64,000 bases of DNA from positions 8,370,001 to 8,434,000 of the forward strand of contig OZ059894.1 of the NCBI GenBank assembly GCA_964057225.1. Reading direction: 5' to 3'. The position numbers and the translations under genes are program-made. Positions 872-26,639 of the stretch are shown in pieces. Each line of letters opens with the position of its first letter. The stretch's first letter is position 1. The notes under the pieces were generated by a model. That model was not told the DNA's origin. It ran no database searches and was given only the letters and a program-made list of their open reading frames with translations. This stretch comes from Auanema rhodensis (taxonomy: Eukaryota; Animalia; Nematoda).

Positions 872-907
<36 letters not shown>

Positions 908-11296: not shown

Positions 11297-11332
<36 letters not shown>

Positions 11333-11567
11333 GCCTATTGCGCCACGGAAGCACATATACTCAACAATCTAGACTTGTGATGGTTCTACTTCTGTTTTAG
11401 ATCAGTCAATGATCCATATTTTCTGATGTTCTGGTCTATCTTATCCAATCCTTCTAGAAAATTTATGAATGAGATCGTGAGTAGATGAATAAAAATTTTA
11501 ATTTTGCTTGATTTGAAGCTTAATTTGAACTGTGGAAACCAAAAATATTTCGCTCCCGGGTGGGCTC

Positions 11568-11603
<36 letters not shown>

Positions 11604-11838
11604 GCCTATTGCGCCACGGAAGCACATATACTCAACAATCTAGACTTGTGAAGGTTCTACTTCTGTTTTAGATCAGTCAATGATCCATATTTTCTGATGT
11701 TCTGGTCTATCTTATCCAATCCTTCTAGAGAATTTATGAATGAGATCGTAAGTAGATGAAATAAAGTTTTAATTTTGCTCAATTTGAAGCTTAATTTGAA
11801 CTGTGGAAACCAAAAATGTTTCGCTCCCGGGTGGGCTC

Positions 11839-11874
<36 letters not shown>

Positions 11875-12109
11875 GCCTATTGCGCCACGGAAGCACATAT
11901 ACTCAATAATCTAGACTTGTGAAGTTTCTACTTCTGTTTTAGATCAGTCAATGATCCGTATTTTCCCATGTTCTGCTCTTTCTTATCCAATCCTTCTAGA
12001 GAATTTATGAATGAGATCGTAAGTAGATGAATCAAAATTTTAATTTTGCTTAATTTGAAGCTTAATTGGAACTGCGGAAACCAAAAATATTTCGCTCCCG
12101 GGTGTGCTC

Positions 12110-12145
<36 letters not shown>

Positions 12146-12651
12146 GCCTATTGCGCCACGGAAGCACATATACTGAACGATCTAGACTTGTGAAGTTTCT
12201 ACTTCTGTTTTAGATCAGTCAATGATCCATATTTTCTGATGTTCTGGTCTATCTTATCCAATCCTTCTAGAAAATTTATGAATGAGATCGTAAGTAGATG
12301 AATTAAAATTTTAATTTTGCTCAATTTGAAGCTTAATTTGAACTGTGGAAATCAAAAATGTTTCGCTCCCGGGTGGGCTCGAACCACCAACCTTTCGGTT
12401 AACAGCTGAACGCGCTGCCTATTGCGCCACGGAAGCACATATACTCAATAATCTAGACTTGTGAAGTTTCTACTTCTGTTTTAAATCAGTCAATAATCCA
12501 TATTTTCTGATGTTCTGGTCTATCTTATCCAATCCTTCTAGAGAATTTATGAATGAGATCGTAAGTAGATGAATCAAAATTTTAATTTTGCTTAATTTGA
12601 AGCTTAATTGGAACTGTGGAAACGAAAAATATTTCGCTCCCGGGTGGGCTC

Positions 12652-12687
<36 letters not shown>

Positions 12688-12922
12688 GCCTATTGCGCCA
12701 CGGAAGCACATATACTCAATAATCTAGACTTGTGAAGTTTCTACTTCTGTTTTAAATCAGTCAATAATCCATATTTTCTGATGTTCTGGTCTATCTTATC
12801 CAATCCTTCTAGAAAATTTATGAATGAGATCGTAAGTAGATGAATTAAAATTTTAATTTTGCTCAATTTGAAGCTTAATTTGAACTGTGGAAATCAAAAA
12901 TGTTTCGCTCCCGGGTGGGCTC

Positions 12923-12958
<36 letters not shown>

Positions 12959-13447
12959 GCCTATTGCGCCACGGAAGCACATATACTCAATAATCTAGAC
13001 TTGTGAAGTTTCTACTTCTGTTTTAAATCAGTCAATAATCCATATTTTCTGATGTTCTGGTCTATCTTATCCAATCCTTCTAGAGAATTTATGAATGAGA
13101 TCGTAAGTAGATGAATCAAAATTTTAATTTTGCTTAATTTGAAGCTTAATTGGAACTGTGGAAACCAAAAATATTTCGCTCCCGGGTGGCCTCGAACCAC
13201 CAACCTTTCGGATAACAGCCGAACGCGCTGCCTATTGCGCCACGGAAGCACATATACTCAACAATCTTGACTTGTGAAGTTTCTACTTCTGTTTTAGATC
13301 AGTCAATGATCCATATTTTCTGATGTTCTGGTCTATCTTATCCAATCCTTCTAGAAAATTTATGAATGAGATCGTAAGTAGATGAATTAAAATTTTAATT
13401 TTGCTCAATTTGAAGCTTAATTTGAACTGTGGAAATCAAAAATGTTT

Positions 13448-13520
13448 CGCTCACGGGTGGGCTCGAACCACCAACCTTTCGGATAACAGCCGAACGCGCT
13501 GCCTATTGCGCCACGGAAGC
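13448..13520 (-). tRNA. tRNA-Asn: tRNA-Asn(GTT) variant next to the provirus 3' LTR (G68T, A38T)
   Basis: Plus strand reads cgctcacggg and ggataacag instead of the consensus cgctcccggg and ggttaacag. Confidence 0.85.
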
Positions 13521-13578
13521 ACATATACTCAACAATCTTGACTTGTGAAGTTTCTACTTCTGTTTTAGATCAGTCAAT

Positions 13579-13923
13579 CGTTCCGTTATGCTCCTGCGTC
13601 GATAATATAAACCATTGTAGTTTATACTATGACGCGCATAGTATTCCTTGGTGTAGCGGTAAGGAATAAAGAGCATAAGGTCAATCATAAGATAAAAGAG
13701 AGAAGGATTTATTAGCATGAAACTACAACAATAATATACAAAGATAAAGATACAATACAATAAGATAAATATAAGTATAAAGACTAAACTACAAGCCGTC
13801 CATGAGCTTGCTAAGAGGCGAACTCCCGACCAAGGGAACGAGGGAAGGCGGAGCCATTCCTCGGTCCTCTGGTGGTCTGGCTCTAACCCTTCAGCTACAT
13901 ATATGGGGAGTCCGAATGGAACG
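13579..13923 (-). repeat. 3' LTR (345 bp)
   Basis: Direct repeat of 25309-25653 with no differences seen. Terminal inverted repeat CGTTCC...GGAACG. AATAAA on the minus strand at 13708-13713. Confidence 0.97.
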
Positions 13924-13925
13924 TG

Positions 13926-13934
13926 CCCTTTTTC
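13926..13934 (-). other. Polypurine tract GAAAAAGGG
   Basis: Purine run ending 2 nt (CA) before the 3' LTR on the sense strand. Confidence 0.7.
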
Positions 13935-14177
13935 AAAGATTTTTCGCGTCCGCGCGATATGAAGAGTTTTTAGTGTATATGTAGCTGAGTTTTAGAGTCT
14001 AGGAGTTTACAAATAAGTTTAAAAGTTTTAAAATCTACATGTAGAAAGATATATAAATAATTTTAATAGGTTTCTTTATGGTATTAAGATAGAATTTGAA
14101 TACAATAATAGGTTTTATGTTATTTTGTAACGGAGGATTAGAAAATAAATTTAGTCATTGTAGTACTGTAATAAAAA

Positions 14178-14209
<32 letters not shown>

Positions 14210-14635
14210 CATGAATGTGTGATTTATGTGAGATAATAAGGAATTATTAAACATTTCTGGTACATGGTTACTCGTATCCTAATGATGATGGGGATAATTT
14301 TATTTAATAATTTACTCGTCTCCATATGTCTCTCTGAATGAATCCTTGAGTACTAATGGAGGCTACCACTCAGATGGGGTGTGGCTTAGGCGCCTGCCAA
14401 TGTTCGTCTCTTCTTGGAGATACATATGGAGCTCAGTTTAGCGCAAAATTTTATCTCTATCGGTCGTATAGGATTACGGTAGCCATTTATTTCTATTATA
14501 TTTTTGCTTATTCCTTATTTTTGGTTGTTTACTCACTTAATCTCTCATCAAAAAGTTTTCTAATTCACCGTTACTTCCATTTTACAATTTACAGAAAAGA
14601 AAAGAATGTATATAAAGTTATTTCTTGTCGTCTTT

Positions 14636-17600
14636 TCATGCTTTCTCTTTTTGATTTTTCATCCGTGGTAACCATAATTCATCTCCATCTTCGTTCTCTG
14701 ATTCCGGTTCGCTATCGGTGTTATCTTGCTCGTTTCTTTTGATCACTCTTAGTATCTCTATATCGCTGTCCTCTTCTTCTTCTTGGTGATTGTTGCGTGT
14801 ATTAGAGCGGGTATTGTGAGTGATATTTTGAGTCGCGTTTGAGAAGAGTTTGAGATTATCCTTGTGGATATCTTGTATCTTTCCTGATGAATTCCTTATC
14901 TGCACCTTGGATCCTTGTACGTTAATAACTTCGTAAGGTCCGTCATAGCTTTTCCTCAGTTTCTGACCAATTTTATGTGACTTTATTGTTGTCATCACCA
15001 TGTCGCCGGGTTGAATGTTCCTTTCGTGCGTCCTTTGTGTTCTATCCTTCTTCTTTCTGGCGTTTTCTTGGTTTTGGGCGATACGTTCACGTATTATTTG
15101 GTCTATTTTCATCATTTGAGGTCTTCTCGTGAGTAATTCTTCCGAAATCTCTTTGATTTTTGTTATGGTTCCCGGTAATTCGGCATCAATTTTCATTCTG
15201 CATTCTTTTCCAAAAAGTGCTACGTAGGGGGCTATGCCTGTTGTAGCATGCTGAATGTTATTGATAGCGAATGTAATTTTCGGCAATACGCTATCCCAGT
15301 CGCTTAGATCTTCCTTCAAGTAGTGTGTTAATCCTTCCTCAAGAGTTCTGTGTAGTCTTTCGACTTGTCCGTTTGAGTTCTTTTGGTGAGGAAGGGTGGG
15401 TTCATGTTGAATTCCCAGTTTTGTACACATTTCTTCAAACTTTTGAGATACAAAATTAGATCCTCTATCGGTGATCAGTCGATGAGGCGGTCCGTATATG
15501 TATACAAAGTTGCGTAGAAATCTGTCAATTGTTATTTCTGTCGTAATTTGCGGTACTGCTATCGTTGTTGACCATTTAGTAAAAGCATCCTGGATGGTAA
15601 TAACGTAAGTACAATTCCTTTTTGACGGGGGAAAAGGTCCCATTACATCCATATGAACTCGTTCAAAAGGCTTGGTCGGTATTTCAAATTGACCTATTGG
15701 CTGTACTGTCATAGAATGTGGGTCCTTCTTCCTTTGTGCGCATTTAATGCAGTTTTTGATATATATCATGATATCATTTTGCATGTTGGTCCAATAAAAT
15801 CTCCGTAGGATAGCTTCTTTAGTTTTATTAATTCCTTGATGCGCTGCGATTGTAGGATCTTCGTGAAATAATTCTATTATCTCGTCCTTGATTGGATGAT
15901 CTTGTGGCACAACGATTGCAGGATGTGGTTTCTTGTCTGTTGGTTTTGTGTAGAGTAATCCATTTATAACGCAATATCTATCGTTAGAGACCATTTTCTT
16001 TTGCGTTCTATATTCGATGTCCGCGATTGTTTTCTTTATCCATAGAGTATTTTGTTGAATTTCTTTTATAGTAGGTGTATCAATAGTATTTATTCTGATC
16101 GATTCTGCGTTTTTCTTTTTCTTCTTTTCCGGCTTTGCATCATTTGCTTCATCGCCTATATAACGTGACAATGCATCACATACTTTATTGAGCTGGCCCT
16201 CTCTGTACCTTATCTCAATGTCGTATTCTTGTATTACTAACTGAAATTTAGCAAGACGACCAAATAGGTCTCTGCGAGTTAGTAAACTTGTGAGAGGGCG
16301 ATGGTCAGTGATACATATAGTATGCGTTCCCAGTATGTATGTGCGAAATTGATTCAGTGCGTATACTAACCCTAAGGCTTCAATTTCGATTGGTGCGTAA
16401 TTGCGTTCCGCTTTTACCAGTTTTCTGCTGGCAAATGCGATAGGATGAAGATGCTTCAATGGTTGCGTGGGATCTTCTGGTTGCAATAATACTGCGCCCA
16501 CTGCTATGTTGCTGCCGTCACTCTCGATAATGAATAATCGATCAGATTTTGGTGGACTTAATACGGGCGCTTGGGTGAGACTTCTTTTTAATCGATCTAC
16601 AGCTTCCTGATGTTGCTTTTCCCAAGCGAATTCGGTATCCGTCTTTGTCAAATCGTACAATGGGCTTGCGATACTTGCAAAATCTTTAATGAATTTGCGA
16701 AAAAATCCGACCATTCCTAAGAATGCGCGAACGCCTGTTGCGTTCTTTGGTGCCGGATATTCTTGTATCGCAGCCACTTTTTGAGGGTCCGGTTTTATTC
16801 CTTCTCTTCCAATTATTAATCCGAGAAATTTCACTTCTGGTTGAGCAAAAGCACATTTCTTTAACTTAATTTTCATTCCCAAACTTTCGACCGCATGTAA
16901 TAATTCGTCGATATCTTCAAGGTGTTGCTTTCTTGTATCAGAGATTATCAGCAGATCGTCCAAGTATACAAATAATTTGCAAGAGCATTTACTTTGCAAA
17001 TATCTTACTGCTGTTTGAAAAGTATGAGGGGCTCCACAGAGACCCATAGGCATTCTTTTATATTGATACGTGCCTGATGTTGTTGTAAATGCTGTTAAAG
17101 GACGATCAGATTTACGTAGTGATATTTGAAAAAATCCTGATACTAAATCAAAGTTTGAGAAGAATTGAGCTCCAGCTGCCATGTCAACTATATCCGATAT
17201 GCTTGGTATAACGTATGTTTGTTTACGCGTGACACTATTGAGGGCTCGAAAATCTGTCACGAACCTATATGTCTCATCCTTCTTCTTCACTAGCACAGCA
17301 GGGCTATTGAAGAGGGATGTAGAGGGTTCGATTATGCCTTGCTCTAGCATTTCTTTTACTTGCTTTTCCACTTCTTCCTGTTTACCAAGTGGAATCCTCG
17401 TTATTCTTGACCTTGGCATGTCCATATCCGATCTTAGTGGGATTGTATGCTCAATGGGTCCTTTAAATAGACCTATCTTCCTATCTTCATTAAGAAAGGC
17501 CTCACGATGGTTCTTAACTATGTTTGTGAGCTCGTGCTTGTCTTCATTATTCAAATCTGCTTTATCCAGATTAAGGTCATTCATAAAATTTCTTGGAAAG

Positions 17601-20600
17601 TGGGGTAATTTATTCTCCCAATCTGCTTCTGGTGGAATATATGGTTGCATAGGGTCTTCTTGTATTGTTTTCCAGCTTGGTACTTCTCCTATTGTTGCCT
17701 GCCCTATGACTGAATTAGCTTCCATAGCTAATGTTTTGTCCGTATTGTTACGGAAAACTACATATACTCCACTTGTCTCACGGAAAGCTGTTGGATAACT
17801 TGAAGCTAATGCATTTCCGTTGTCCCCTAAGATTACCACTTCGTTTGATTTGAGTGGTCTATCAGCTTTGATTGGAATAGTGGACTCTTCATCGGGTTGT
17901 ATGATTCTTTTCTTCAAATTGATGATATTTACTGTTATTGCCGTTTGTTTAATGGCGTCCTGTTCAATTAAAGGGAGTGCGTAATTTCCGATCTCTAGCA
18001 TCTTTTTTGATGGTTTTAAACTGACATCAATGTTTTCACTGTCGAGCGTGCTCATAAAGTCCATCCCAATAAGAGCAGGGGCTGGGCAATCACAGTCATT
18101 TGAGACCAAAAAGGTATGTTCTATCTCATAGCCAGCAATTTCGATGTTTAAATTTATTTTTCCGTATAATGTAAACGTTGTTTTGTTTGCTGCCATTGCC
18201 ACTAATCGTCGCTTTTTGACGTGTTGAGCCATGTTCAGGTATTTTAATGTCGATAGCCTGACATATGAGACTGACGAGCCTGAATCCCATAAAGCTAATA
18301 TCAGCTTATCTTCTACTGATATATAGATAAGTGGTAGCTTTGTTTCTTTTGATTTAATAGAAGCAATAAATGGTATTGCTAGTGGAATGAATGTTACGAG
18401 CGCCGGGTAATACTGCTTCATTATATTTTCTGGCATTGGTTGGTCTGGGCGGCTAACGAGTTCTAATGTTTCCTCGTAGCCTGGGGGCTCGTTGTCTGCT
18501 CTTTGAATATGCATGACTGGTAGTGGCATTGCTTTGAAAAAGTAAAATTTTCCGGCAAAGATGGTAATTATGATTGCTGCAATGATTAGAACAGTAGATC
18601 CTATTAATATTAAGGTTCTTTCAATTGTCCCCATTAAGAATTGTTTTATGCTATTCCAGGCTGTAGTTGTGAACTCAGTTGCTTTCGAAATATAATCGCT
18701 GCCCTTTTTCAAAAGAATAAAGGCTGACGTTATCTTTGGGTCGTTGTGAATCGTATTTAGTACGTGATTTTGTCGTATTGAAGCTAAACTAGCTCCATAC
18801 GCTATTGCGGTAGTCATTGAATAGACTCTTGATGAAAGATTAGTATAAAGATGAGCACCTGTAAATTTTAAAGGCGTAACTTTATGTTGGTGAGCTCCAT
18901 CAAAAAGTGTGATGGGATTGACTTCCGCAGACCCATTAATGTTCATCCATTCCCCGTTTTTCTCATAAATATCAGTTGGTACGTGTTCGCAGTCGATTTC
19001 TTTCCCGTACGAGAGTAAATCTCTTGATCCCGGTGCTGCGAAATATAATTTGTTGTCTTCGGTTGTTACTGGTGTCTCTAAGTAACATGTTTCATTGATT
19101 TTATGAGAGTGGTGAACGGTTTTAGGCTCTATTGGTAGGCATATATGAACATGAACTATTTCGCTGCCCACGAAACGCGCTGCTATGTCTTCTCTGCCAA
19201 GGATTGTTCTCATTGCTATGGTTGGCTCTATTTGGAGAATTGAACGCCACAATTCGAGATATCTATTTTGTATCTCGCATATGGATTCGTAAGATTCCAT
19301 AAAATGCTTTTGCAATTCTTCCTGTATAAGAGTGGTTGCATATTGTAGATGATCTTGCGCTATTCTCTGAGATATATTCTGTTTATATTGTATCTCGTTG
19401 TTTACTTTGGAGCCTATATAATGTGCTTGCGCTTGTACTGCTTTCGTTTCAATCTCCAAAGGTGGTGATGACGTTCTCTGCTTTCTTTGCGATCTTAAAG
19501 ACATATCTGTGACCGTTGCAAACGTAGTAATAGGCTGTTCTTTGTGAACACCATATATTAATGTAACCGTTGTTGGCGCGCGCGTGGATGTTATGGCTTG
19601 AGTTGTATCGATCTCTGGCGTTGTTTGAGGGTCCTGGATTAGCTTTGTTACTTCCGTTGTTGTCGTTATATATTCAGTTTTGTCTGTCAGGCGTCTGGTT
19701 GAGTAGGGAGGTGTTCTTTTATCCTCTAGTAGCGGTAGAAAGGTTTGAATGAGAAGATTTCGTGTATATTTGTTAGGACTTTTTGTTTGTTGATGGGGCC
19801 CAACAGGTATACCAAAATTATTCTCCATATCTCGATATAATTTCTCTATATCTGGCAGGATAATAGTTGGTACAGGCAGATGTCGAAATCTTTCATCGTC
19901 TGCTCTGGCCGCTGTTCGATTCGGTTTTATTGTACGTAGTTTGAGGACTTGGTGATATAGGTCAATTGTTTCTTTAATAATCAGTTGTTCCTTTTCGTTA
20001 TTAGTTGATAATACGGGCCTGATTGGCGGCATGTTCACAAATGCTTTCAAAACTTCTTGTTTTGATGGCACCGACATGTTATTTTGAGCGAAAATGGTCG
20101 GTGTAAATGCCAACTCGAGCGCTATACTTTCGGTTCGCTCTCGATAACTTCCTTCTTTTGTGAGTATTTTTTCGTCAAATTCTTCTGCTGTTAATCTGTC
20201 GCCTATCTGCTCTAAAAGTTGCAGGGAGGTGAGGTATTTAACGGCTCCTCTTGTGGTAGCTGCCAGTTCTTTTTGGGCGAAGAATTGAAGCATTGCTTCT
20301 TCCGGGTCGTAGAATTCATATATTTTTAAGAATCTTTCTATTGATCTATCCGAAGTAGTGCTTCGTAGGAAGAATTTGAACTGCTCGGGATGTGCTGAGA
20401 TCCACTTAACGATAGAATATGTTGGATCTATTGTCCGTCTGGCTCGAATTATAGGAATTATTTGTGATATCCCAGGGTTACTCATTACTGGACGTAAAAA
20501 TGGGTATGGGCATATGTTCAATGTTAAAGTTTCGTAGTCTTCTTGTTCTTTTATCCAGCTTTCGTCCAATTGCAATGCGCATTGCGCTATAGCCCTTTTT

Positions 20601-23380
20601 TGACGCTTAGCTGGCAACTTTTTATATTCTCTTTCAATTAAGTTGTGTATATTACTGTCATTTGGATATTTGGGAAAGAGTATATAATTGCCCGTGGTTG
20701 ATTGAAATATAGGTTGCGAAAAACATGATGTAATCTGTTTTGGAATTTGTTTATTGTCGATAACAAGGGCTGACTGCGTATTGGGAATCAGTATTATGCT
20801 GTCTCCAATGATGGCATCATATTCGCTCATGTCTATATAGTTGCATCTCTGTTCGTATGATTGGATTTCCCAGATAATCATTGAAGTATTGGATGCGCAT
20901 TGGCCATGATGTGCAAGACAGCCTTCCGTATTGAGTAATAGATTTGTCAATATGGTGTCGTCTGGCATCCTGGTCATAACGCCTCTTTCCAAAACCAGTC
21001 GTTCTTTTTCTTCGCATTGTTCGTAATTGAATGAGCGCGCTGGAGAGAATGTAGGTTCGGTTGTCGCGTATGTCAAGCTATCCAATTTAATCAGGTCTTC
21101 TGATTTCCATTTACGGTCGCGGACAGCCAGTCTACATTCGTTTTCTGTTGTTGGCTCAATTCGAACAATGGAGGAGTTATGATCTCTTAAAAATAGCAAA
21201 TCCCTGATGCATATTTTATGTATTTCTTTTGAACATCGCCATGAATCCCATTCGTGAGCCGTCTGGTTTCTTGTATACAGATGTATGTTTGTGCGGAGGA
21301 CATGTTTGGTAGGTGGTATTGTGCATTTCCTCAGGGGTGGGGGTATAAGGAGGGCTCCACCTGTAGCTTTAGTGCACATCTGATAAGCATCAGTTATAGT
21401 GATTAGTGATAAGATCACTGATAAAGCTACTGCTAGTGTTAAGGGGGATATCAAGGTCAAATTATTGACTCTTGAGCCTCTTCCTCTACCTCTATTATTG
21501 TTGTTTCCCCTGAAGGGATTATTGCCGCGTTGACGGTTATCACTCTCCTGATTACGTGATAAGTTGTTATTTCTTTGATACCAATTTGGATTTGAGAGAT
21601 TTCTACCGCGATTACCAAGATTGCGGTTTCTTGCGAAAGAATTTTGCAAATTTTGTGGTTTCTGATTATTTGATGAATTTTGATAACTTTGATAATTTTG
21701 ATAATTTTGATAGTTTCTATTGTTAAATGATTGATAGCCTCTACCGATTCCTCGCCTTCCGGTGTCGCGCCTGGGAGGGAATGTTCTATCGATTGCGTTA
21801 ACCAGTAGCGCCTGAGGGTCGGCTACTTGGTTGGCAATTGATTCCTCCCATCTGGCATTATCAATTGCCTCGGCAAACGTTTTTGGTTTAGCTCTGATTA
21901 CCCCCGGGCGTATTGTGTTTTTGAGACCGCGTAGAAAGGTGGATCTAAGAATGTGGTCCTTGTGTGGGTCTGTATGGGAGAAAGCGTTTAAGCTTAGGCT
22001 TCGTAAAGTTTGTGCGAATCCATCTACTGATAGCTCGCCTTGGGTGGAATTCTGTAGCGTTATCAGCGCCGGATCTTGATTATACTCTGGGCATAGCCTA
22101 GAGGTAAGTTCTTCGATGAGAGTATTCCACGAGCCAGATGTCTTGATAGTATCGCTAAGCTGTGTATAAGCTTCTTCAGCTCGTTCGTTTTTGAGAAGTA
22201 ATGGTAAGATTGTTAATCTTTCGGGCATAACTAAGCCTAAGGCGTTTGCAAAGGTGTTAAACTTGGCCACGAAGTCTCTAAAGTTGCGACTTCCGTCGTA
22301 TATAGGGCAATATGGGGAGCTTAATGCCTGAGCAATGGTAGATTTACCCGCTCCTGGAAGCCGTGATGTTTCGGTCATTTCGGATGAGATGCCCTCAGGG
22401 TATGTGATAGGTGATATTATCACTTCGCTCCTTGTTGGATCTTGATGAGTGTTTTCTATTGCCTTAGGGTTTCTGCTAGAGGAGCCTATTATAGGTGTAG
22501 TTGTTGCGAAACGGGCTCTTGGAACCTGGATGACTTTACCAGATGCCTGAGGCGATGTTCTATCAGTTGATCGTGAGCTAGGGATCGCACTATCTGATCT
22601 GTTAAGATTAGGATTATGTGAAGAAAACCGGGGTTTTGCTGTTCCGCCGGGTGTTGTTTTATCGCCTGGGGATAAGTTTAAAATCTTTATCAGTCGATTT
22701 GTTAAAGATCTTTTGTTTTTAAACTTATCAGTTGTTAATGATAAGGGTGAAGCTTCTTGTATGCCTTCGAGGCTGGCTTCTGCTGACGAAGTTTCTGTTG
22801 CGCGCTTACTGGGTGTTTTTGTCTTCCGCTTATTAGGGATATTCTTTTTGATCTTATCAGTGATTTTTGATAAGGTTGAAGGGTTGTCACTAGGTTGGGT
22901 GGGTTCTAAAGTTAGCGAATGTGGTTGATTAATAGGCGTGGAAGACGCTTGCGGGCTTTGTGTTAACCCGAGGGATGGGGAAGGTGCGTTATCAGTGATA
23001 ACTGATAAGTTCGACGCGTTTGGGTCTGAGGTTACCGGTGAGGCAGATGCGGTTGTCGGCTTTTTCTTTTGAATTTTTCGCAAATTTTTATTAGTATCAA
23101 CTGAGCGTACCTTGGGATTTGTAGTTGGGGTTTGAGTGCTGTCGTCGGCTATGATGAAGTCCGGGTCTTCGTCGGTGTCGTCAGAAGGTGAATATGTGCC
23201 TTCTCGGGGAGTATAGAACTTGTCGACTTGCGGCTTCGGCTTCTCGTCTGGTTGGTGCGGTTCTTCTATTTGAACACTGAGAAGTCGGGTGCGGCTTCGG
23301 GTACGACTTGCGACAGTAGCGTCACTGTTGATATCGGACGGGTAAAGGGCTGGGAAAGCCGATGAGAATCTTTTGGCCAC
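14636..23380 (-). CDS. Gag-Env-protease-RT-RNaseH-integrase polyprotein (true start uncertain; first in-frame ATG at 22378)
   Basis: Capsid-like region (CPIYDGSRNFRDF...QGELSVDGF...TFLRGL, ~21830-22310). Aspartic protease LWDSGS (18278-18286). RT RMPMGL and YLDD (16955-16966). RNase H IIESDGS...TDHRPL...DALSR. Integrase HHCC, HMDVMGP / TDRGSNF / NGQVER and a GPY motif. Confidence 0.95.
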   Translation of the reverse strand: MAKRFSSAFPALYPSDINSDATVASRTRSRTRLLSVQIEEPHQPDEKPKPQVDKFYTPREGTYSPSDDTDEDPDFIIADDSTQTPTTNPKVRSVDTNKNLRKIQKKKPTTASASPVTSDPNASNLSVITDNAPSPSLGLTQSPQASSTPINQPHSLTLEPTQPSDNPSTLSKITDKIKKNIPNKRKTKTPSKRATETSSAEASLEGIQEASPLSLTTDKFKNKRSLTNRLIKILNLSPGDKTTPGGTAKPRFSSHNPNLNRSDSAIPSSRSTDRTSPQASGKVIQVPRARFATTTPIIGSSSRNPKAIENTHQDPTRSEVIISPITYPEGISSEMTETSRLPGAGKSTIAQALSSPYCPIYDGSRNFRDFVAKFNTFANALGLVMPERLTILPLLLKNERAEEAYTQLSDTIKTSGSWNTLIEELTSRLCPEYNQDPALITLQNSTQGELSVDGFAQTLRSLSLNAFSHTDPHKDHILRSTFLRGLKNTIRPGVIRAKPKTFAEAIDNARWEESIANQVADPQALLVNAIDRTFPPRRDTGRRGIGRGYQSFNNRNYQNYQNYQSYQNSSNNQKPQNLQNSFARNRNLGNRGRNLSNPNWYQRNNNLSRNQESDNRQRGNNPFRGNNNNRGRGRGSRVNNLTLISPLTLAVALSVILSLITITDAYQMCTKATGGALLIPPPLRKCTIPPTKHVLRTNIHLYTRNQTAHEWDSWRCSKEIHKICIRDLLFLRDHNSSIVRIEPTTENECRLAVRDRKWKSEDLIKLDSLTYATTEPTFSPARSFNYEQCEEKERLVLERGVMTRMPDDTILTNLLLNTEGCLAHHGQCASNTSMIIWEIQSYEQRCNYIDMSEYDAIIGDSIILIPNTQSALVIDNKQIPKQITSCFSQPIFQSTTGNYILFPKYPNDSNIHNLIEREYKKLPAKRQKRAIAQCALQLDESWIKEQEDYETLTLNICPYPFLRPVMSNPGISQIIPIIRARRTIDPTYSIVKWISAHPEQFKFFLRSTTSDRSIERFLKIYEFYDPEEAMLQFFAQKELAATTRGAVKYLTSLQLLEQIGDRLTAEEFDEKILTKEGSYRERTESIALELAFTPTIFAQNNMSVPSKQEVLKAFVNMPPIRPVLSTNNEKEQLIIKETIDLYHQVLKLRTIKPNRTAARADDERFRHLPVPTIILPDIEKLYRDMENNFGIPVGPHQQTKSPNKYTRNLLIQTFLPLLEDKRTPPYSTRRLTDKTEYITTTTEVTKLIQDPQTTPEIDTTQAITSTRAPTTVTLIYGVHKEQPITTFATVTDMSLRSQRKQRTSSPPLEIETKAVQAQAHYIGSKVNNEIQYKQNISQRIAQDHLQYATTLIQEELQKHFMESYESICEIQNRYLELWRSILQIEPTIAMRTILGREDIAARFVGSEIVHVHICLPIEPKTVHHSHKINETCYLETPVTTEDNKLYFAAPGSRDLLSYGKEIDCEHVPTDIYEKNGEWMNINGSAEVNPITLFDGAHQHKVTPLKFTGAHLYTNLSSRVYSMTTAIAYGASLASIRQNHVLNTIHNDPKITSAFILLKKGSDYISKATEFTTTAWNSIKQFLMGTIERTLILIGSTVLIIAAIIITIFAGKFYFFKAMPLPVMHIQRADNEPPGYEETLELVSRPDQPMPENIMKQYYPALVTFIPLAIPFIASIKSKETKLPLIYISVEDKLILALWDSGSSVSYVRLSTLKYLNMAQHVKKRRLVAMAANKTTFTLYGKINLNIEIAGYEIEHTFLVSNDCDCPAPALIGMDFMSTLDSENIDVSLKPSKKMLEIGNYALPLIEQDAIKQTAITVNIINLKKRIIQPDEESTIPIKADRPLKSNEVVILGDNGNALASSYPTAFRETSGVYVVFRNNTDKTLAMEANSVIGQATIGEVPSWKTIQEDPMQPYIPPEADWENKLPHFPRNFMNDLNLDKADLNNEDKHELTNIVKNHREAFLNEDRKIGLFKGPIEHTIPLRSDMDMPRSRITRIPLGKQEEVEKQVKEMLEQGIIEPSTSLFNSPAVLVKKKDETYRFVTDFRALNSVTRKQTYVIPSISDIVDMAAGAQFFSNFDLVSGFFQISLRKSDRPLTAFTTTSGTYQYKRMPMGLCGAPHTFQTAVRYLQSKCSCKLFVYLDDLLIISDTRKQHLEDIDELLHAVESLGMKIKLKKCAFAQPEVKFLGLIIGREGIKPDPQKVAAIQEYPAPKNATGVRAFLGMVGFFRKFIKDFASIASPLYDLTKTDTEFAWEKQHQEAVDRLKRSLTQAPVLSPPKSDRLFIIESDGSNIAVGAVLLQPEDPTQPLKHLHPIAFASRKLVKAERNYAPIEIEALGLVYALNQFRTYILGTHTICITDHRPLTSLLTRRDLFGRLAKFQLVIQEYDIEIRYREGQLNKVCDALSRYIGDEANDAKPEKKKKKNAESIRINTIDTPTIKEIQQNTLWIKKTIADIEYRTQKKMVSNDRYCVINGLLYTKPTDKKPHPAIVVPQDHPIKDEIIELFHEDPTIAAHQGINKTKEAILRRFYWTNMQNDIMIYIKNCIKCAQRKKDPHSMTVQPIGQFEIPTKPFERVHMDVMGPFPPSKRNCTYVITIQDAFTKWSTTIAVPQITTEITIDRFLRNFVYIYGPPHRLITDRGSNFVSQKFEEMCTKLGIQHEPTLPHQKNSNGQVERLHRTLEEGLTHYLKEDLSDWDSVLPKITFAINNIQHATTGIAPYVALFGKECRMKIDAELPGTITKIKEISEELLTRRPQMMKIDQIIRERIAQNQENARKKKDRTQRTHERNIQPGDMVMTTIKSHKIGQKLRKSYDGPYEVINVQGSKVQIRNSSGKIQDIHKDNLKLFSNATQNITHNTRSNTRNNHQEEEEDSDIEILRVIKRNEQDNTDSEPESENEDGDELWLPRMKNQKEKA
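18550..21461 (-). other. env: Envelope glycoprotein region inside the polyprotein (class III, gB-like fusogen)
   Basis: Internal signal sequence LTLISPLTLAVALSVILSLITITDA/YQMC, Cys-rich ectodomain with several NxS/T sequons, furin sites RQKR and RARR, a gB-like block at 18989-19348, and TM anchor TLILIGSTVLIIAAIIITIFAG. Confidence 0.85.
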
Positions 23381-23777
23381 CTTTGTAGGACTTTTGGTTT
23401 GGAAAAACCGAGAATGGTGAGCTACGTGTGGGATGTTGATGTAAGGTGCGTAAGATTCTTTTAGATGTGTGTTGGGAGAGAGAGAGATTCGGGAGCAATA
23501 GGATAGTCGTGCTTCGCTGGGCGATGCGGAGGGTAAATGAGAGGGAGTTTTTCAAATCGTGGCCAACAATCTGACTCCGCCTATCTACCGTAAGCTTAAT
23601 ATAGTTAATGATGTTTATCTCTTCTCAAAAACTATTTTTATCCGCTGTTGTACTTTCCGCTTGTACTTGCTTTAATCTCTCTTTTTACGAGTAGCTTTCA
23701 ATCATGTTTTTATCCCCCTTTTCTCTCTTGTTTACCAAGCTATATTTTATTATTTTGAGAGCTAAGAATTTTTGAAA

Positions 23778-24320
23778 ATGAGCGTCCAGCCTACTGGAAT
23801 GACCTTTGTCATGCAAAAGCTGTATGACGTTATTGTCTTTTATGATGCTGAAGAGAGATTGGCTTATAGGCCCCATCCTGATCTAGTGTTAATGGTTGGT
23901 GCATTAGTCAATTTCAATTTTCAGTATTTTCTTTTGCTATTTTAGTTTATTGAGGATCTGCAAATGTTCTATTTGGGCAGGGGCCTCGTTAATTTTTCCG
24001 CTATGGCGGAAATTGAGCCCGAGATTGAGCTCGTAGGGCGTCTCTGCCTCTGTGACCTCTGCGCGCATTCTTATGCCGCTCTCCCGTGTGGACTTGTAGG
24101 AAGTCCCTGGAGATGGTATACCGAGAGGCAGCCTTTATTCTATGAATTATTATGTAAAATTTTGTTTAAAATTTATGTATGTTATGATAGCTCTTCGCTT
24201 GGATTGCAGCTGAGGGCCTCACTGGGGAGAGAGTATCCCGAATACCTCACCCCCAGTTACGAGCCTATCTCTCTTGCTGCAGAGTTTGAGAGACAGCTAG
24301 CTTTCAAGTGGGGTTTTTGA
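23778..24320 (+). CDS. Predicted spliced antisense accessory gene of the provirus, ~163 aa (exons 23778-23894 and 23946-24320)
   Basis: AAAATG start, 39-codon exon, 51-nt GTTGGT...TTTTAG intron in phase with the 118-aa ORF, CxCxxCxH motif, and AATAAA at 24324-24329 just after the stop. Confidence 0.6.
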
Positions 24321-25295
24321 CTGAATAAAGCTTGTACTCTGTGTTTTTATTTTTATGCGCTTTGCTCTGTTTTCGTCAAGAAAATGGACTTATGTTTTCA
24401 ATCTTTTCCTCATTCCTTTTCCCTTAAATAGCATGTTTTGCTCAAAATGTTTTCGACATTGTGCATGCTAATGAGGTTTGAGGAGAGTTATTGAAAAGGC
24501 TGTCCTTTTTCTTGATCAAAATAAGCAAAAGTGCGTTTTCCTAAGCAAATTTCATTTTGAAAATGAGAAAAATACGTCTATTTTTAAACATTTCCCATTT
24601 ACTTAGGATTACTGTAGGAGATAAGGGGTATCTTATGAGTTGAAACAACGAAATGATTTGAGGAAGGTGACATAATCTACGGGGATAAAATCCGTAGCAG
24701 TTATGCTTCCGCCAACTTGACCTGACTGTCAAATAAGAGCTGAGAAGTCTTATTGCAGATTTACCAGGCTTTTTCGGACTAGTGTGGTCTGTTTTTATAT
24801 TCAATTTATGTAACCGTTTTTGGTTTCCCGCAAAATAATATGTAAAATGATCTTTTACGTCTGAATATAATATTTTCAAAATTCTAGTCCTGACCACAAA
24901 ATATACAAACTATAATCGATTGCGCGCGTCTTATAAATTTTTGTTCCAATAATCGAACTTCTCTATGCCCAAAAAAAAAATGTGAACAATTATAATTTCT
25001 CGTTTGGCGAAATTGTCCTCTATTTCAATCCAAACGTCCTCAAAATGGCATGAGAAGCGGTACAAGATACGATAAAGAAAAGGGTGGACATTCAGACGGT
25101 TTTAAATTGAGGACGGCGGGCAAAAAATTTTATTGGTCCTATCTCGCATTTAAGCGAGATCCCTTGTATCTGTACCTTAAAACAAATTGGCGCCTTCATT
25201 TTGTTGTTTCAAGTGGAGGAATTTATAATTTAGAATGCAAAAATGGACTTTTACAATAAAAAGAAAATTTTTTTTTTTTCAAAAGATGAGTTCGA

Positions 25296-25308
25296 GGTGG
25301 AACCTCCA
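25296..25308 (-). promoter_or_regulatory. Primer-binding site complementary to the tRNA-Gln 3' end
   Basis: TGGAGGTTCCACC directly follows the 5' LTR. It is the complement of GGTGGAACCT-CCA, the 3' end of animal tRNA-Gln (from memory). Confidence 0.85.
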
Positions 25309-25653
25309 CGTTCCGTTATGCTCCTGCGTCGATAATATAAACCATTGTAGTTTATACTATGACGCGCATAGTATTCCTTGGTGTAGCGGTAAGGAATAAA
25401 GAGCATAAGGTCAATCATAAGATAAAAGAGAGAAGGATTTATTAGCATGAAACTACAACAATAATATACAAAGATAAAGATACAATACAATAAGATAAAT
25501 ATAAGTATAAAGACTAAACTACAAGCCGTCCATGAGCTTGCTAAGAGGCGAACTCCCGACCAAGGGAACGAGGGAAGGCGGAGCCATTCCTCGGTCCTCT
25601 GGTGGTCTGGCTCTAACCCTTCAGCTACATATATGGGGAGTCCGAATGGAACG
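25309..25653 (-). repeat. 5' LTR (345 bp)
   Basis: Identical to 13579-13923. Flanked by the PBS inside and the CAAT TSD outside. Confidence 0.97.
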
Positions 25654-25797
25654 CAATGATCCATATTTTCTGATGTTCTGGTCTATCTTATCCAATCCTT
25701 CTAGAGAATTTATGAATGAGATCGTAAGTAGATGAATTAAAATTTTAATTTTGCTCAATTTGAAGCTTAATTTGAACTGTGGAAATCAAAAATGTTT

Positions 25798-25815
25798 CGC
25801 TCACGGGTGGGCTCA

Positions 25816-25850
<35 letters not shown>

Positions 25851-25870
25851 GCCTATTGCGCCACGGAAGC
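25798..25870 (-). pseudogene. tRNA-Asn copy with B-box C56T and G68T, probably not transcribed
   Basis: Plus strand gctcaaacc reads GGTTTGAGC on the minus strand, losing the invariant C56 of the B box. Confidence 0.7.
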
Positions 25871-26073
25871 ACATATACTCAACAATCTAGACTTGTGAAG
25901 TTTCTACTTCTGTTTTAGATCAGTCAATGATCCATATTTTCTGATCTTCTGGTCTATCTTATCCAATCCTTCTAGAAAATTTATGAATGAGATCGTAAGT
26001 AGATGAATTAAAATTTTAATTTTGCTTAATTGGAACTGTGGAAACCAAAAATATTTCGCTCCCGGGTGGGCTC

Positions 26074-26109
<36 letters not shown>

Positions 26110-26344
26110 GCCTATTGCGCCACGGAAGCACATATACTCAACAATCTAGACTTGTGAAGTTTCTACTTCTGTTTTAGATCAGTCAATGATCCATATTTTC
26201 TGATGTTCTGGTCTATCTTATCCAATCCTTCTAGAAAATTTATGAATGAGATCGTAAGTAGATGAATCAAAATTTTAATTTTGCTTAATTTGAAGCTTAA
26301 TTGGAACTGTGGAAACCAAAAATATTTCGCTCCCGGGTGGGCTC

Positions 26345-26380
<36 letters not shown>

Positions 26381-26603
26381 GCCTATTGCGCCACGGAAGC
26401 ACATATACTCAACAATCTAGACTTGTGAAGTTTCTACTTCTGTTTTAGATCAGTCAATGATCCATATTTTCTGATCTTCTGGTCTATCTTATCCAATCCT
26501 TCTAGAAAATTTATGAATGAGATCGTAAGTAGATGAATTAAAATTTTAATTTTGCTTAATTGGAACTGTGGAAACCAAAAATATTTCGCTCCCGGGTGGG
26601 CTC

Positions 26604-26639
<36 letters not shown>

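What the first reader, a model, noticed from the sequence alone, without database searches (positions are those of the whole stretch)
14636..23380. Intact, recently inserted retrovirus-like element with a gB-like env fused between gag and protease in one ORF
Seen: one stop-free frame with capsid, internal signal peptide, ~950-aa Cys-rich glycoprotein, TM anchor, then PR-RT-RH-IN, with identical LTRs and a perfect TSD. Known: retroviruses and errantiviruses place env 3' of pol in a separate ORF; gag-env-pro-pol has, to my recollection, been reported for a nematode metavirus clade (NERV). The block LQYATTLIQEELQKHFMESYESICEIQNRYLELWRSILQIEPTIAMRTILGREDIAARFVGSEIVHVHICLPI...CYLETPV...EIDC parallels the herpesvirus gB central helix and crown (LQF.Y..IQ..VN......AWCE.QN....LW......NP.AI.....GR.VSAR.LGDV..V..C.PV...CY..P, from memory). 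Inference: a potentially infectious element. Its polyprotein would thread the ER membrane as alphavirus and flavivirus polyproteins do, with Gag cytosolic, Env lumenal, and Pol cytosolic on the Env tail at 1:1:1 stoichiometry unless regulated by splicing.
Basis: partly seen in the sequence, partly recalled or inferred. Interest (0 to 1): 0.92.

Follow-up and report, generated by a model that had tools for sequence, protein, structure and literature searches.

The report
Young nematode retrovirus-like element, gag-env-pol
This is an intact, very recently inserted copy of a known but unusual family of nematode retrovirus-like elements that encode capsid, a herpesvirus-gB-type membrane-fusion protein and the replication enzymes in one reading frame; the family has already been described.

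Summary
A 12,075-bp LTR element on the minus strand (window 13579-25653) has 345-bp LTRs that are 100% identical and a perfect 4-bp target-site duplication (CAAT). It sits inside a tandem array of tRNA-Asn genes.

One stop-free frame of 2,914 codons encodes, in order:
- a capsid-fold Gag;
- an internal signal-like segment;
- a class III (gB / Monjiviricetes-type) glycoprotein with a TM anchor;
- PR-RT-RH-IN of Ty3/gypsy type, with all catalytic motifs present.

The same uninterrupted arrangement occurs in Caenorhabditis auriculariae, C. nigoni, C. brenneri and Meloidogyne hapla, and in dozens of other predicted proteins. It is therefore a family trait, not an assembly chimera.

The GAG-ENV-POL order with gB-type Env in nematodes is already published (Sacco et al. 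2022; Chary & Hayashi 2026). I file this as a new member of a known kind.

Details added here:
- No ATG lies in the first 334 codons, nor in any frame for 1.3 kb.
- Late-domain-type motifs sit on the Env tail before PR, and are enriched across relatives.
- A furin-type site is common in relatives.
- The LTR ends are CG…CG.
- The primer-binding site (PBS) is conserved.

Infectivity and polyprotein topology remain inferences.

The parts
13579..25653 (-). Whole LTR element, 12,075 bp, no internal stop or frameshift in its long ORF
13575..13578 (.). Target-site duplication CAAT, left copy
   Evidence: the intact repeat unit reads ...GTCAATGATCC...; CAAT is present on both sides of the element
25654..25657 (.). 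Target-site duplication CAAT, right copy
25309..25653 (-). 5' LTR (345 bp), ends CG...CG with a 6-bp terminal inverted repeat
13579..13923 (-). 3' LTR, 100% identical to the 5' LTR
25290..25308 (-). Primer-binding site abutting the 5' LTR (sense TGGAGGTTCCAC...). The first 12 nt are shared with three Caenorhabditis relatives.
13924..13934 (-). Polypurine tract abutting the 3' LTR (sense GAAAAAGGGCA)
23552..25289 (-). Long leader (about 1.75 kb) with many ATGs and stops in all frames; no ORF conserved with relatives
14636..23380 (-). Long ORF, 2,914 codons plus stop (gag-env-PR-RT-RH-IN)
22379..23551 (-). In-frame, stop-free, ATG-free 391 codons upstream of the first ATG (S/T/P-rich, disordered-looking N-terminal extension)
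   Evidence: 0 stops in frame against 18 and 30 in the other frames; 0 ATG in any frame over 1,326 nt against 7.8 +/- 2.2 in dinucleotide shuffles
21776..22348 (-). Gag capsid (CA) two-lobed helical domain, aa about 345-535. Met335 aligns with the N-terminal Met of most relatives.
21470..21763 (-). Basic R/G/N/Q-rich tail of Gag (aa 540-637), no CCHC zinc knuckle
   Evidence: pLDDT below 50
21386..21469 (-). Internal signal-like hydrophobic segment, aa 638-665 (basic n-region, 22-residue h-region, small residues at -3/-1)
18629..21385 (-). Env ectodomain, aa 666-1584, class III fusogen fold. It has 10 N-glycosylation sequons, 16 Cys, RQKR at aa 926 at the start of a disordered loop, and a lineage-specific insertion of about 370 aa.
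18527..18628 (-). Env transmembrane anchor, aa 1585-1618
18320..18526 (-). Cytoplasmic tail / pre-protease spacer, aa 1619-1687, with PPGY and YPAL late-domain-type motifs
18050..18319 (-). Aspartic protease (DSG)
16811..17290 (-). Reverse transcriptase (YLDD)
16223..16624 (-). RNase H
15386..15895 (-). Integrase (HHCC zinc finger and D,D35E core)
53..13521 (-). Host tandem array of tRNA-Asn(GTT) genes, left of the insertion (period 271/259 bp)
25797..37001 (-). Same tRNA-Asn array, right of the insertion

Best explanation
This is a young, structurally complete copy of a nematode Ty3/gypsy-type endogenous retrovirus of the GAG-ENV-POL kind ('NERV'-type). It integrated into a tandem tRNA-Asn gene array.

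Shown:
- LTRs, TSD, PBS and PPT.
- One uninterrupted frame encoding capsid-fold Gag, a class III (gB / Monjiviricetes-type) glycoprotein between an internal hydrophobic signal-like segment and a TM anchor, then PR-RT-RH-IN with intact catalytic motifs.
- The same arrangement in relatives from several nematode genera.

Inferred mechanism:
- The frame is translated as one polyprotein, probably from Met335, and possibly also from a non-AUG codon upstream.
- Gag is made in the cytosol.
- The internal signal inserts the chain into the ER membrane, so the Env ectodomain is lumenal, glycosylated and probably cut at a furin-type site.
- The TM anchor returns the chain to the cytosol, where a short tail carrying late-domain-type motifs leads into PR-RT-RH-IN.
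- Signal peptidase and the element's protease would then separate the parts, leaving Gag, Env and Pol at one membrane for budding of enveloped particles.
For: Anatomy.

Capsid fold: all top 50 Foldseek PDB hits are retroelement or retroviral capsids (TM-score on the target (TMt): dArc2 0.62, Ty3 capsid 0.61).

Env fold:
- PDB top 50 hits are all herpes gB (E down to 5e-11, probability 1.0).
- BFVD hits are rhabdo-, chu- and nya-like glycoproteins and gB (E down to 3e-14).
- PF24664 scores 61 bits against a cut-off of 27.
- All 41 PDB sequence hits are gB.

Pol: the best PDB hits are Ty3 Gag-Pol 7q5b (E 4.7e-104) and Ty3 RT 4ol8.

Family:
- 304 Env homologues with E <= 1e-3.
- Dozens of predicted proteins with (gag)-env-PR-RT-RH-IN.
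- Uninterrupted ORFs at DNA level in C. auriculariae, C. nigoni, C. brenneri, M. hapla and a JGI contig.
- The nearest Pol relatives (45-47% identity) all carry the fusion-glycoprotein domain in the same protein.

Topology conserved: 34 of 36 fused relatives have a TM segment between Env and PR/RT, and 20 of 36 have a hydrophobic segment just before Env.

Motifs:
- Late-domain-type motifs occur in the TM-to-PR tail of 16 of 49 relatives, against 3% of background windows (p 1.3e-11).
- R-x-K/R-R follows the N-terminal Env domain in 22 of 41 relatives, against 8% of background windows.

Literature: GAG-ENV-POL with gB-type ENV in Nematoda (PMC13524379).
Against: - No expression, protein or particle data exist. 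Topology rests on hydropathy only; SignalP and DeepTMHMM were not available.
- Global TM-scores to gB are low (0.17-0.29). The monomer model has an insertion of about 370 aa and free domain orientations, so the match is at domain level.
- The herpes gB Pfam model is below its cut-off (36.6 against 43 bits).
- The open frame has no ATG for its first 334 codons, and the 1.75-kb leader upstream holds many ATGs. How ribosomes reach the start is unexplained.
- The LTR ends are CG...CG rather than the canonical TG...CA seen in relatives.
- The host species was not identified. 'Nematode' is inferred from the relatives.
Confidence: 0.82

Rival explanations
1. The fusion exists only in the genome. Env and Gag-Pol would be made from different spliced or subgenomic mRNAs, as in retroviruses and Drosophila errantiviruses, so no membrane-threading polyprotein is made.
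For: A distant relative keeps gag as a separate ORF upstream of a fused env-pol ORF (L005). Chary & Hayashi treat GAG, ENV and POL as separate units with gaps allowed. Long AUG-rich leaders in all four close elements suggest RNA processing of some kind.
Against: Both junctions (gag-env and env-PR) are kept in frame without stops in every DNA-checked close relative and in M. hapla. That would not need to be conserved if env were always spliced apart. The element has almost no nematode-consensus 3' splice sites: one TTTCAG in 12 kb, and none in the first 3.4 kb.
Confidence: 0.12
2. The copy is complete in appearance but not autonomous. The long N-terminal extension has no ATG, and the non-canonical CG...CG LTR ends would make it a dead-on-arrival or helper-dependent copy.
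For: There is no ATG in the first 334 codons. The LTR termini differ from the TG...CA/TA of three relatives. Only one copy, and no solo LTR, lies in the 64-kb window.
Against: Met335 aligns with the N-terminal Met of most relatives' Gag (>=90% of rows in A2), so a normal Gag start is present. Both LTR ends changed in a complementary way that keeps the inverted repeat, and this very copy integrated with a perfect 4-bp TSD. All catalytic motifs are present.
Confidence: 0.1
3. Assembly chimera or chance ORF.
For: The element lies in a highly repetitive tandem array, where assemblies often fail.
Against: The TSD is perfect, with phase continuity of the array across the insertion. The LTRs are identical. 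The same architecture is found in independent genomes. A 2,914-codon open frame in DNA of 36-44% G+C is far beyond chance.
Confidence: 0.01

Closest known systems
Nematode endogenous retroviruses with gag-env-pro-pol order (NERV; Sacco et al. 2022, J Gen Virol 103:1739, cited in PMC13524379; paper not held, details from memory)
   Same: Ty3/gypsy-type Pol. Class III glycoprotein of the Monjiviricetes/gB type placed between gag and protease. One continuous frame. Nematode hosts; the Meloidogyne relatives found here belong to the group that paper's title describes.
   Different: This copy belongs to a rhabditid sub-lineage. Its nearest relatives are in Auanema sp. JU1783 (48% in Env), Caenorhabditis spp. 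and Diploscapter pachys (45-47% in Pol), against only 33-35% Pol identity to the Meloidogyne elements. The PBS differs from that of the M. hapla element. It also has an ATG-less N-terminal extension, CG...CG LTR ends and an Env insertion of about 370 aa.
GAG-ENV-POL 'errantiviruses' with HSV/gB-type ENV in Nematoda, Bryozoa and Platyhelminthes (Chary & Hayashi, eLife 2026, PMC13524379)
   Same: Gene order, gB-type ENV with the ectodomain flanked by a signal or TM segment and a TM segment, furin site not always present, and multiple near-identical copies with LTRs.
   Different: The main text of that paper, searched by term, does not discuss a single fused ORF, the start-codon problem or late-domain motifs. 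Whether this host was in their set is unknown, because no supplements are held.
Drosophila errantiviruses (gypsy, ZAM)
   Same: Ty3/gypsy Pol, 4-bp TSD, an acquired viral fusogen, LTR-PBS-PPT anatomy.
   Different: There, env lies 3' of pol as a separate spliced ORF and is F-type (class I, baculovirus F-like). Here env lies between gag and PR, in frame, and is class III.
Cer1 of C. elegans (Ty3/gypsy, single gag-pol ORF; own knowledge, and PMC13524379 places Cer1 next to a gB-type element)
   Same: Nematode Ty3/gypsy element with gag and pol in one frame, so a 1:1 Gag:Pol translation ratio has precedent.
   Different: Cer1 has no env.
Atlas virus of Ancylostoma ceylanicum (bioRxiv 10.1101/2021.11.23.469668) and Tas of Ascaris (Malik et al. 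2000, cited in PMC13524379)
   Same: Nematode LTR elements that captured a viral fusion glycoprotein.
   Different: Atlas has a phlebovirus Gn-Gc-like Env (class II is from memory); the BEL/Pao backbone of both, and env 3' of pol, are from memory.
Flavivirus-type membrane-threading polyproteins (analogy only; own knowledge)
   Same: A cytosolic capsid is followed by an internal signal sequence, lumenal glycoprotein(s), TM anchors and cytosolic enzymes, with processing shared between signal peptidase and the viral protease.
   Different: No homology. These are RNA viruses with a different fusogen class.

Membership tests
Ty3/gypsy (Metaviridae) LTR retroelement | Direct LTRs flanked by a short target-site duplication | tested here: met
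   345-bp LTRs 100% identical. 4-bp TSD CAAT. 4-bp TSDs also in three relatives.
Ty3/gypsy (Metaviridae) LTR retroelement | pol domain order PR-RT-RH-IN, with RT and IN closest to Ty3 | tested here: met
   Pfam order. Best PDB hits are Ty3 Gag-Pol 7q5b (E 4.7e-104) and Ty3 RT 4ol8 (E 1e-78).
Ty3/gypsy (Metaviridae) LTR retroelement | PBS (TGG...) next to the 5' LTR and a polypurine tract next to the 3' LTR | tested here: met
   The primer tRNA was not identified. The PBS does not match the flanking tRNA-Asn.
Ty3/gypsy (Metaviridae) LTR retroelement | Canonical LTR termini TG...CA | tested here: not met
   The termini are CG...CG (CGTTCC...GGAACG). Relatives have TGT...ACA or TGT...ATA. This is a usual feature of the family, not a strict definition.
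Nematode GAG-ENV-POL / NERV clade | env located between gag and protease-pol | tested here: met
   (domain order). Definition taken from PMC13524379.
Nematode GAG-ENV-POL / NERV clade | gag, env, pro and pol in one continuous frame (as I recall the Sacco et al. abstract) | tested here: met
   2,914 codons without a stop. The same holds in L001, L003, L004 and L006.
Nematode GAG-ENV-POL / NERV clade | Pol groups with other env-bearing nematode elements | tested here: met
   By similarity ranking only. The best Pol hits (45-47% identity) are C. auriculariae, C. remanei, C. nigoni, D. pachys and C. brenneri proteins, all carrying PF24664. Meloidogyne hits are at 33-35%. No formal tree was built.
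Nematode GAG-ENV-POL / NERV clade | Nematode host | tested here: inconclusive
   The host of the window is not identified. All named close relatives are nematodes.
Class III viral fusion glycoproteins (herpes gB, rhabdovirus G, Monjiviricetes_fusion) | Sequence membership in a curated family model | tested here: met
   PF24664 Monjiviricetes_fusion scores 61 bits against a cut-off of 27. PF00606 herpes Glycoprotein_B scores 36.6 against 43, which is not met.
Class III viral fusion glycoproteins (herpes gB, rhabdovirus G, Monjiviricetes_fusion) | Fold: beta-rich fusion/PH-like domains, long central helix, crown domain | tested here: met
   AF2 model with pLDDT 73; N-terminal beta domain and helix-plus-crown region at 85-97. 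Foldseek PDB top 50 hits are all gB, probability 1.0. BFVD class III glycoproteins. Global TM-scores are low (0.17-0.29), so the match is at domain level.
Class III viral fusion glycoproteins (herpes gB, rhabdovirus G, Monjiviricetes_fusion) | Type I membrane topology: signal peptide, ectodomain, C-terminal TM anchor | tested here: met
   Hydropathy only: segments 638-667 and 1585-1618, conserved in relatives.
Class III viral fusion glycoproteins (herpes gB, rhabdovirus G, Monjiviricetes_fusion) | Trimeric assembly, bipartite fusion loops, membrane-fusion activity | not tested
   No trimer model was made and the fusion loops were not examined. Fusion activity cannot be tested with these tools.
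Errantivirus sensu stricto (Drosophila gypsy type) | env 3' of pol as a separate ORF, F-type fusogen | tested here: not met
   env is 5' of PR and in frame. The fold is class III, not F-type.

The most novel reading that the evidence does not exclude
The element may integrate two functions that retroviruses normally place in Gag.

(a) A budding late domain (PPxY plus YPxL) sits on the Env cytoplasmic tail just before the protease. The motif type swaps between lineages (P(T/S)AP in the Meloidogyne relatives and in several unnamed Env homologues).

(b) Gag would be made in two forms. One is a long form started at a non-AUG codon, giving a disordered extension of at least 334 residues. The other is the canonical form from Met335, reached by leaky scanning across a 1.3-kb stretch kept free of AUG in all frames. 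This is a dual-initiation layout like that known for some gammaretroviral Gag proteins.
Probability: 0.25. Interest if true: 0.55.

Novelty: new member of a known kind. Interest (0 to 1): 0.35.

Why it matters
It is a clean reference example of the nematode gag-env-pol elements, and a good substrate for descriptive study:
- It has zero LTR divergence, no stop or frameshift, and all catalytic motifs.
- It has an unambiguous insertion site.
- It has a well-modelled class III fusogen.

These elements bear on how retrotransposons become enveloped viruses by capturing fusogens from RNA or DNA viruses. They also bear on how a single frame can deliver cytosolic, lumenal and again cytosolic products.

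The family-wide enrichment of late-domain-type motifs on the Env tail is a new lead, as is the AUG-free in-frame extension in this copy. Either would say something about assembly and translation control in these elements. Both are open to checking with transcript and peptide data alone.

Tried and rejected
- **tRNA-targeted integration (as in Ty3).** The insertion lies 58 bp upstream of a tRNA-Asn gene, but any site in this array is within about 200 bp of one. Three relatives have no tRNA within 2-6 kb of the element on either side. Not supported.
- **PBS complementary to the flanking tRNA-Asn.** No match beyond TGG.
- **A conserved extra ORF in the long leader.** No protein or nucleotide similarity among the four leaders.
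- **A nematode-consensus 3' splice acceptor near the ORF start.** There is no TTTCAG in the first 3.4 kb of the element, so cis- or trans-splicing there is unsupported, though not excluded.
- **ATG-free zone as a family trait.** The C. auriculariae copy starts its extension with ATG and has out-of-frame ATGs after it. The trait is specific to this element.
- **Host identification by exact look-up of the ORF product.** Not on record, either from the first start or from Met335. Pfam on the ORFs of window 37-64 kb gave nothing useful.
- **Other copies or solo LTRs in the window.** None.
- **Gag against PDB by sequence.** No hit. This was resolved by the fold search.
- **Word-indexed protein search with Env.** Only two hits. 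The full HMMER search was needed.
- **Sacco et al. 2022.** Could not be read, so what I say of it beyond its title is from memory.
- **The third weak hydrophobic stretch (aa 1657-1675).** I reject it as a TM segment because it holds three prolines and overlaps the protease N-terminal region. This judgement was not tested.
Full report
**1. Observation**

The reported frame is real but lies on the minus strand.
- Window 14636..23380 is one ORF of 2,914 codons from the first possible start. The frame is open stop-to-stop from 23551.
- A BLAST of the flanks finds two 345-bp direct repeats, 13579-13923 and 25309-25653, at 100% identity.
- Outside them, the tetranucleotide CAAT is duplicated. The surrounding 271-bp repeat continues in phase across the insertion: the intact unit reads ...GTCAATGATCC....
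- The element therefore spans 13579-25653 (12,075 bp).
- In sense orientation, the 5' LTR is followed at once by a TGG-initiated primer-binding site, and the 3' LTR is preceded by a purine run.
- No other copy or solo LTR lies in the window.

**2. What the frame encodes**

Pfam on the whole product gives the following:

| Family | Residues | Note |
|---|---|---|
| Retrotrans_gag | 400-487 | weak, 20 bits |
| Monjiviricetes_fusion PF24664 | 1294-1485 | 61 bits, cut-off 27 |
| Herpesvirus Glycoprotein_B PF00606 | 1342-1434 | 36.6 bits, below the cut-off of 43 |
| Aspartic protease | 1688-1775 | |
| RVT_1 | 2031-2190 | |
| RNase H | 2253-2386 | |
| Integrase zinc finger and core | 2496-2665 | |

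- The catalytic motifs are all present: PR DSG, RT YLDD, IN HHCC and D,D35E.
- Against solved structures, the Pol part is closest to the Ty3 Gag-Pol polyprotein (7q5b, E 4.7e-104, one stretch across RT-RH-IN) and to Ty3 RT (4ol8). The backbone is therefore Ty3/gypsy.
- Hydropathy finds a strong segment at 638-667, preceded by an RG-rich basic stretch and followed by small residues at -3/-1. A stronger one lies at 1585-1618, and a weak proline-containing one at 1657-1675.
- The ectodomain between them has 10 N-glycosylation sequons and 16 Cys. It is glycoprotein-like but not Cys-rich.

**3. Capsid**

- Sequence search of the Gag part against the PDB finds nothing.
- An AlphaFold2 model of residues 335-637, built on an alignment with 18 relatives (A2), has an ordered helical core at pLDDT above 90 (residues about 345-535 of the ORF) and a disordered basic tail.
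- All top 50 Foldseek PDB matches are retroelement or retroviral capsids. By TM-score on the target (TMt): dArc2 capsid 0.62, Ty3 capsid 0.61, PEG10 C-lobe 0.78, MLV and HIV CA. E-values are modest, 3e-3 and weaker.
- There is no CCHC knuckle. The R/G/N/Q-rich tail is the only candidate nucleic-acid-binding part; this is inference.

**4. Env**

- A full HMMER search of the 959-residue Env piece against 1.84 billion representatives gives 304 hits at E <= 1e-3 and 166 at E <= 1e-10.
- There are two conserved blocks, an N-terminal beta-rich part and a C-terminal part, around a variable middle.
- The AlphaFold2 model (A1, 53 sequences) has mean pLDDT 73. The N-terminal beta domain scores 85-98. 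A 76-residue central helix and the following beta domain score 85-97. A helical insertion scores about 80, and a mucin-like stretch is disordered.
- Foldseek against the PDB returns only herpesvirus gB in the top 50 (E 4.9e-11 to 4e-8, probability 1.0). Global TM-scores are low (0.17-0.29), as expected for a monomer model with a large insertion and free domain orientation.
- Against BFVD, the best matches are glycoproteins of rhabdo-like, chu-like and nyaviruses together with gB (E from 3.3e-14).
- By sequence, all 41 weak PDB hits are gB, aligned over the central helix and the next domain.
- The Env is thus a class III fusogen homologue. Its nearest curated sequence family is the Monjiviricetes glycoprotein rather than herpes gB proper.
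- RQKR at residue 926 sits at the start of a low-confidence loop after the N-terminal domains. An R-x-K/R-R motif occurs at that place in 22 of 41 relatives, against 8% of background windows.
- From general knowledge, several herpesvirus gB proteins are furin-cleaved in the loop at the equivalent place.

**5. Relatives and whether the fusion is real**

- The word-indexed search finds a 1,666-aa protein of Auanema sp. JU1783 (48% identity in Env) and a 2,536-aa protein of Caenorhabditis auriculariae.
- I mapped the window's own domains onto the hits. Dozens of predicted proteins carry (gag)-env-PR-RT-RH-IN in this order. Named ones come from C. remanei, C. nigoni, C. brenneri and Acrobeloides nanus.
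- At DNA level the gene is a single uninterrupted ORF (length = 3 x residues + 3) in each of these:
  - C. auriculariae (L001)
  - C. nigoni (L003)
  - C. brenneri (L004)
  - Meloidogyne hapla (L006)
  - a JGI metagenome contig
- One more distant metagenome relative (L005) has a separate gag ORF with a CCHC knuckle, followed by a fused env-pol ORF.
- Ranking by Pol, the closest proteins (45-47% identity) all carry the fusion-glycoprotein domain in the same protein: C. auriculariae, C. remanei, C. nigoni, Diploscapter pachys and C. brenneri. Meloidogyne enterolobii and M. hapla follow at 33-35%.
- Of 36 fused relatives, 34 have a strong hydrophobic segment between Env and PR/RT. Twenty have one just before Env, although hundreds of residues precede it.
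- The architecture is therefore a conserved family trait, not a chimera.

**6. Family traits of the close (rhabditid) group**

- The window element and the three Caenorhabditis elements share a 4-bp TSD and a PBS beginning TGGAGGTNCCAC directly after the LTR.
- They also share leaders of 1.8-2.9 kb between the LTR and the ORF.
- The leaders are AUG-rich and show no similarity to one another.
- The M. hapla element has a different PBS.
- The window's LTRs end CG...CG (CGTTCC...GGAACG), where the relatives have TGT...ACA or TGT...ATA. Both ends changed so that the inverted repeat is kept, and this copy integrated with a perfect TSD.

**7. The start of the frame (unexplained)**

- The first in-frame ATG is codon 335.
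- The 391 codons before it, back to the preceding stop, contain no stop in frame. The other two frames have 18 and 30 stops. About 18.6 in-frame stops would be expected from base composition (my own calculation), so the stretch is, or very recently was, coding.
- The same 1,326 nt hold no ATG in any frame. Mononucleotide composition predicts 15, and dinucleotide-preserving shuffles give 7.8 +/- 2.2; 0 of 2,000 shuffles reach zero.
- Met335 aligns with the N-terminal Met of most relatives' Gag (conserved in >=90% of rows of A2). It is probably the canonical start.
- The C. auriculariae element has a 141-residue extension before the equivalent Met, but starts it with ATG and has out-of-frame ATGs after it. 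The ATG-free layout is not a family trait.
- The reading that fits both facts is initiation at a non-AUG codon for a long form, with leaky scanning to Met335 for the canonical form. This is inference from one copy and a post hoc statistic.
- There is no nematode-consensus splice acceptor in the first 3.4 kb. Splicing-in of an upstream ATG exon is therefore unsupported but not excluded.
- How ribosomes pass the AUG-rich leader upstream is unknown for the whole group.

**8. Late-domain-type motifs**

- The 69 residues between the TM anchor and the protease carry PPGY (1632) and YPAL (1658).
- In 49 relatives with a TM-to-PR tail of at most 150 residues, 16 carry PPxY, YPxnL or P(T/S)AP in that tail. 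Only 30 of 1,005 equal-length windows elsewhere in the same proteins do (odds ratio 15.8, p 1.3e-11).
- The nearest relative (Auanema) has PPSY and YPTML at similar positions. The Meloidogyne relatives have PSAP or PTAP.
- The sequences are not phylogenetically independent, so the p-value overstates the case. Motif swapping between lineages is what retroviral late domains do.
- I infer that the Env tail, or pre-protease spacer, recruits the ESCRT budding machinery.

**9. Mechanism**

Shown: the anatomy, the folds and their conservation.

Inferred:
- Translation of one polyprotein.
- Cytosolic Gag.
- Co-translational membrane insertion by the internal signal.
- A lumenal, glycosylated, probably furin-cut Env ectodomain.
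- Return to the cytosol through the TM anchor.
- A cytosolic tail with late-domain motifs, followed by PR-RT-RH-IN.
- Separation by signal peptidase on the lumenal side and by the element's protease on the cytosolic side.

After the signal-peptidase cut, Gag would keep the hydrophobic segment at its C-terminus, and Pol would hang on the Env tail. All three products would then be held at one membrane. A 1:1 translation ratio of Gag to Pol has precedent in single-ORF Ty3/gypsy elements such as Cer1 (own knowledge). The main rival is expression of env and gag-pol from separate processed RNAs. Conservation of both in-frame junctions argues against it.

**10. Age**

There are no differences in 345 bp between the LTRs. 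Assuming a nematode-like mutation rate of about 2-3e-9 per site per generation (own knowledge), the 95% upper bound is of the order of 1-2 million generations. This is a rough inference that ignores gene conversion.

**11. Comparison with what is known**

- Chary & Hayashi (eLife 2026, PMC13524379) state that elements in Nematoda, Bryozoa and Platyhelminthes carry only HSV/gB-type ENV, arranged GAG-ENV-POL. They cite Sacco et al. [quoted passage not shown]
- They also note ectodomains flanked by a signal peptide or TM segment and a TM segment, and a furin site that is not always conserved.
- As I recall it, the Sacco abstract describes a continuous gag-env-pro-pol ORF. I could not read the paper.
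- The finding is thus a new member of a known kind.
- The host was not identified. All named close relatives are rhabditid nematodes.

**12. Declaration of a slip**

- a nematode spliced-leader sequence;
- a guessed tRNA fragment;
- a four-letter furin motif of a herpesvirus gB.

Consensus lines printed by the alignment tool were not used. Only its list of nearly invariant columns was.

Noticed in passing
window 53-13521 and 25797-37001 (minus strand): The '271-bp satellite' around the element is a tandem array of at least 94 tRNA-Asn(GTT) genes with a period of 271 or 259 bp. Of these, 74 are identical, and Rfam scores them at 66.6 bits against a cut-off of 29. The array runs off the left end of the window. 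The element sits 58 bp upstream of one copy.
   Followed up: partly
window 22379-23704 (element coordinates 1950-3275): There is no ATG in any frame for 1,326 nt (0 observed, 7.8 +/- 2.2 in dinucleotide shuffles). This stretch overlaps 391 in-frame stop-free codons before the first ATG (codon 335). Non-AUG initiation with leaky scanning is possible. The C. auriculariae relative does not share the feature.
   Followed up: partly
window 18320-18526 (aa 1619-1687): PPGY and YPAL lie on the Env cytoplasmic tail before the protease. Late-domain-type motifs (PPxY, YPxnL, P(T/S)AP) occur in this tail in 16 of 49 relatives, against 3% of background windows.
   Followed up: yes
window 13579-13584, 13918-13923, 25309-25314, 25648-25653: The LTR termini are CG...CG (CGTTCC...GGAACG) instead of TG...CA. 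Three Caenorhabditis relatives have TGT...ACA or TGT...ATA. The inverted repeat is kept.
   Followed up: partly
window 25297-25308; L001 4149-4160; L003 2776-2787; L004 2069-2080: The PBS TGGAGGTNCCAC abuts the 5' LTR in all four rhabditid elements. It differs in the M. hapla element (L006). The primer tRNA is not identified.
   Followed up: partly
window 23552-25308; L001 4149-6000; L003 2776-5000; L004 2069-5000: All four elements have leaders of 1.8-2.9 kb between the 5' LTR and the long ORF. The window and L001 leaders are rich in ATGs. There is no shared sequence or ORF, and there are tandem repeats in L003 and L004. How translation reaches the ORF is unknown.
   Followed up: partly
window 19510-20620 (aa about 921-1290): A lineage-specific insertion of about 370 residues lies in the Env ectodomain, after the furin-type site. 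It consists of a helical bundle (pLDDT about 80) and a T/P-rich disordered stretch. It is shared only with the Auanema relative and a few fragments.
   Followed up: partly
L005 3510-14948: A distant metagenome relative keeps gag (with a CCHC knuckle) as a separate ORF, followed by a fused env-PR-RT-RH-IN ORF of 3,036 aa. Its contig also carries bacterial-looking genes (Bac_luciferase, NAD_binding), so its origin is unclear.
   Followed up: no
window 37001-64000: Past the array, G+C drops from about 38% to 25-34%. There are no ORFs over 124 aa, no Pfam hit of note, no RNA family and no tandem array. It looks like intron-rich or non-coding host DNA, and gave no clue to the host.
   Followed up: partly
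window 13177-13520 and 25798-25870: The tRNA-Asn copies next to the insertion carry changes: two have one in the anticodon loop. They score lower than the bulk of the array (58.5-61.2 against 66.6 bits).
   Followed up: no
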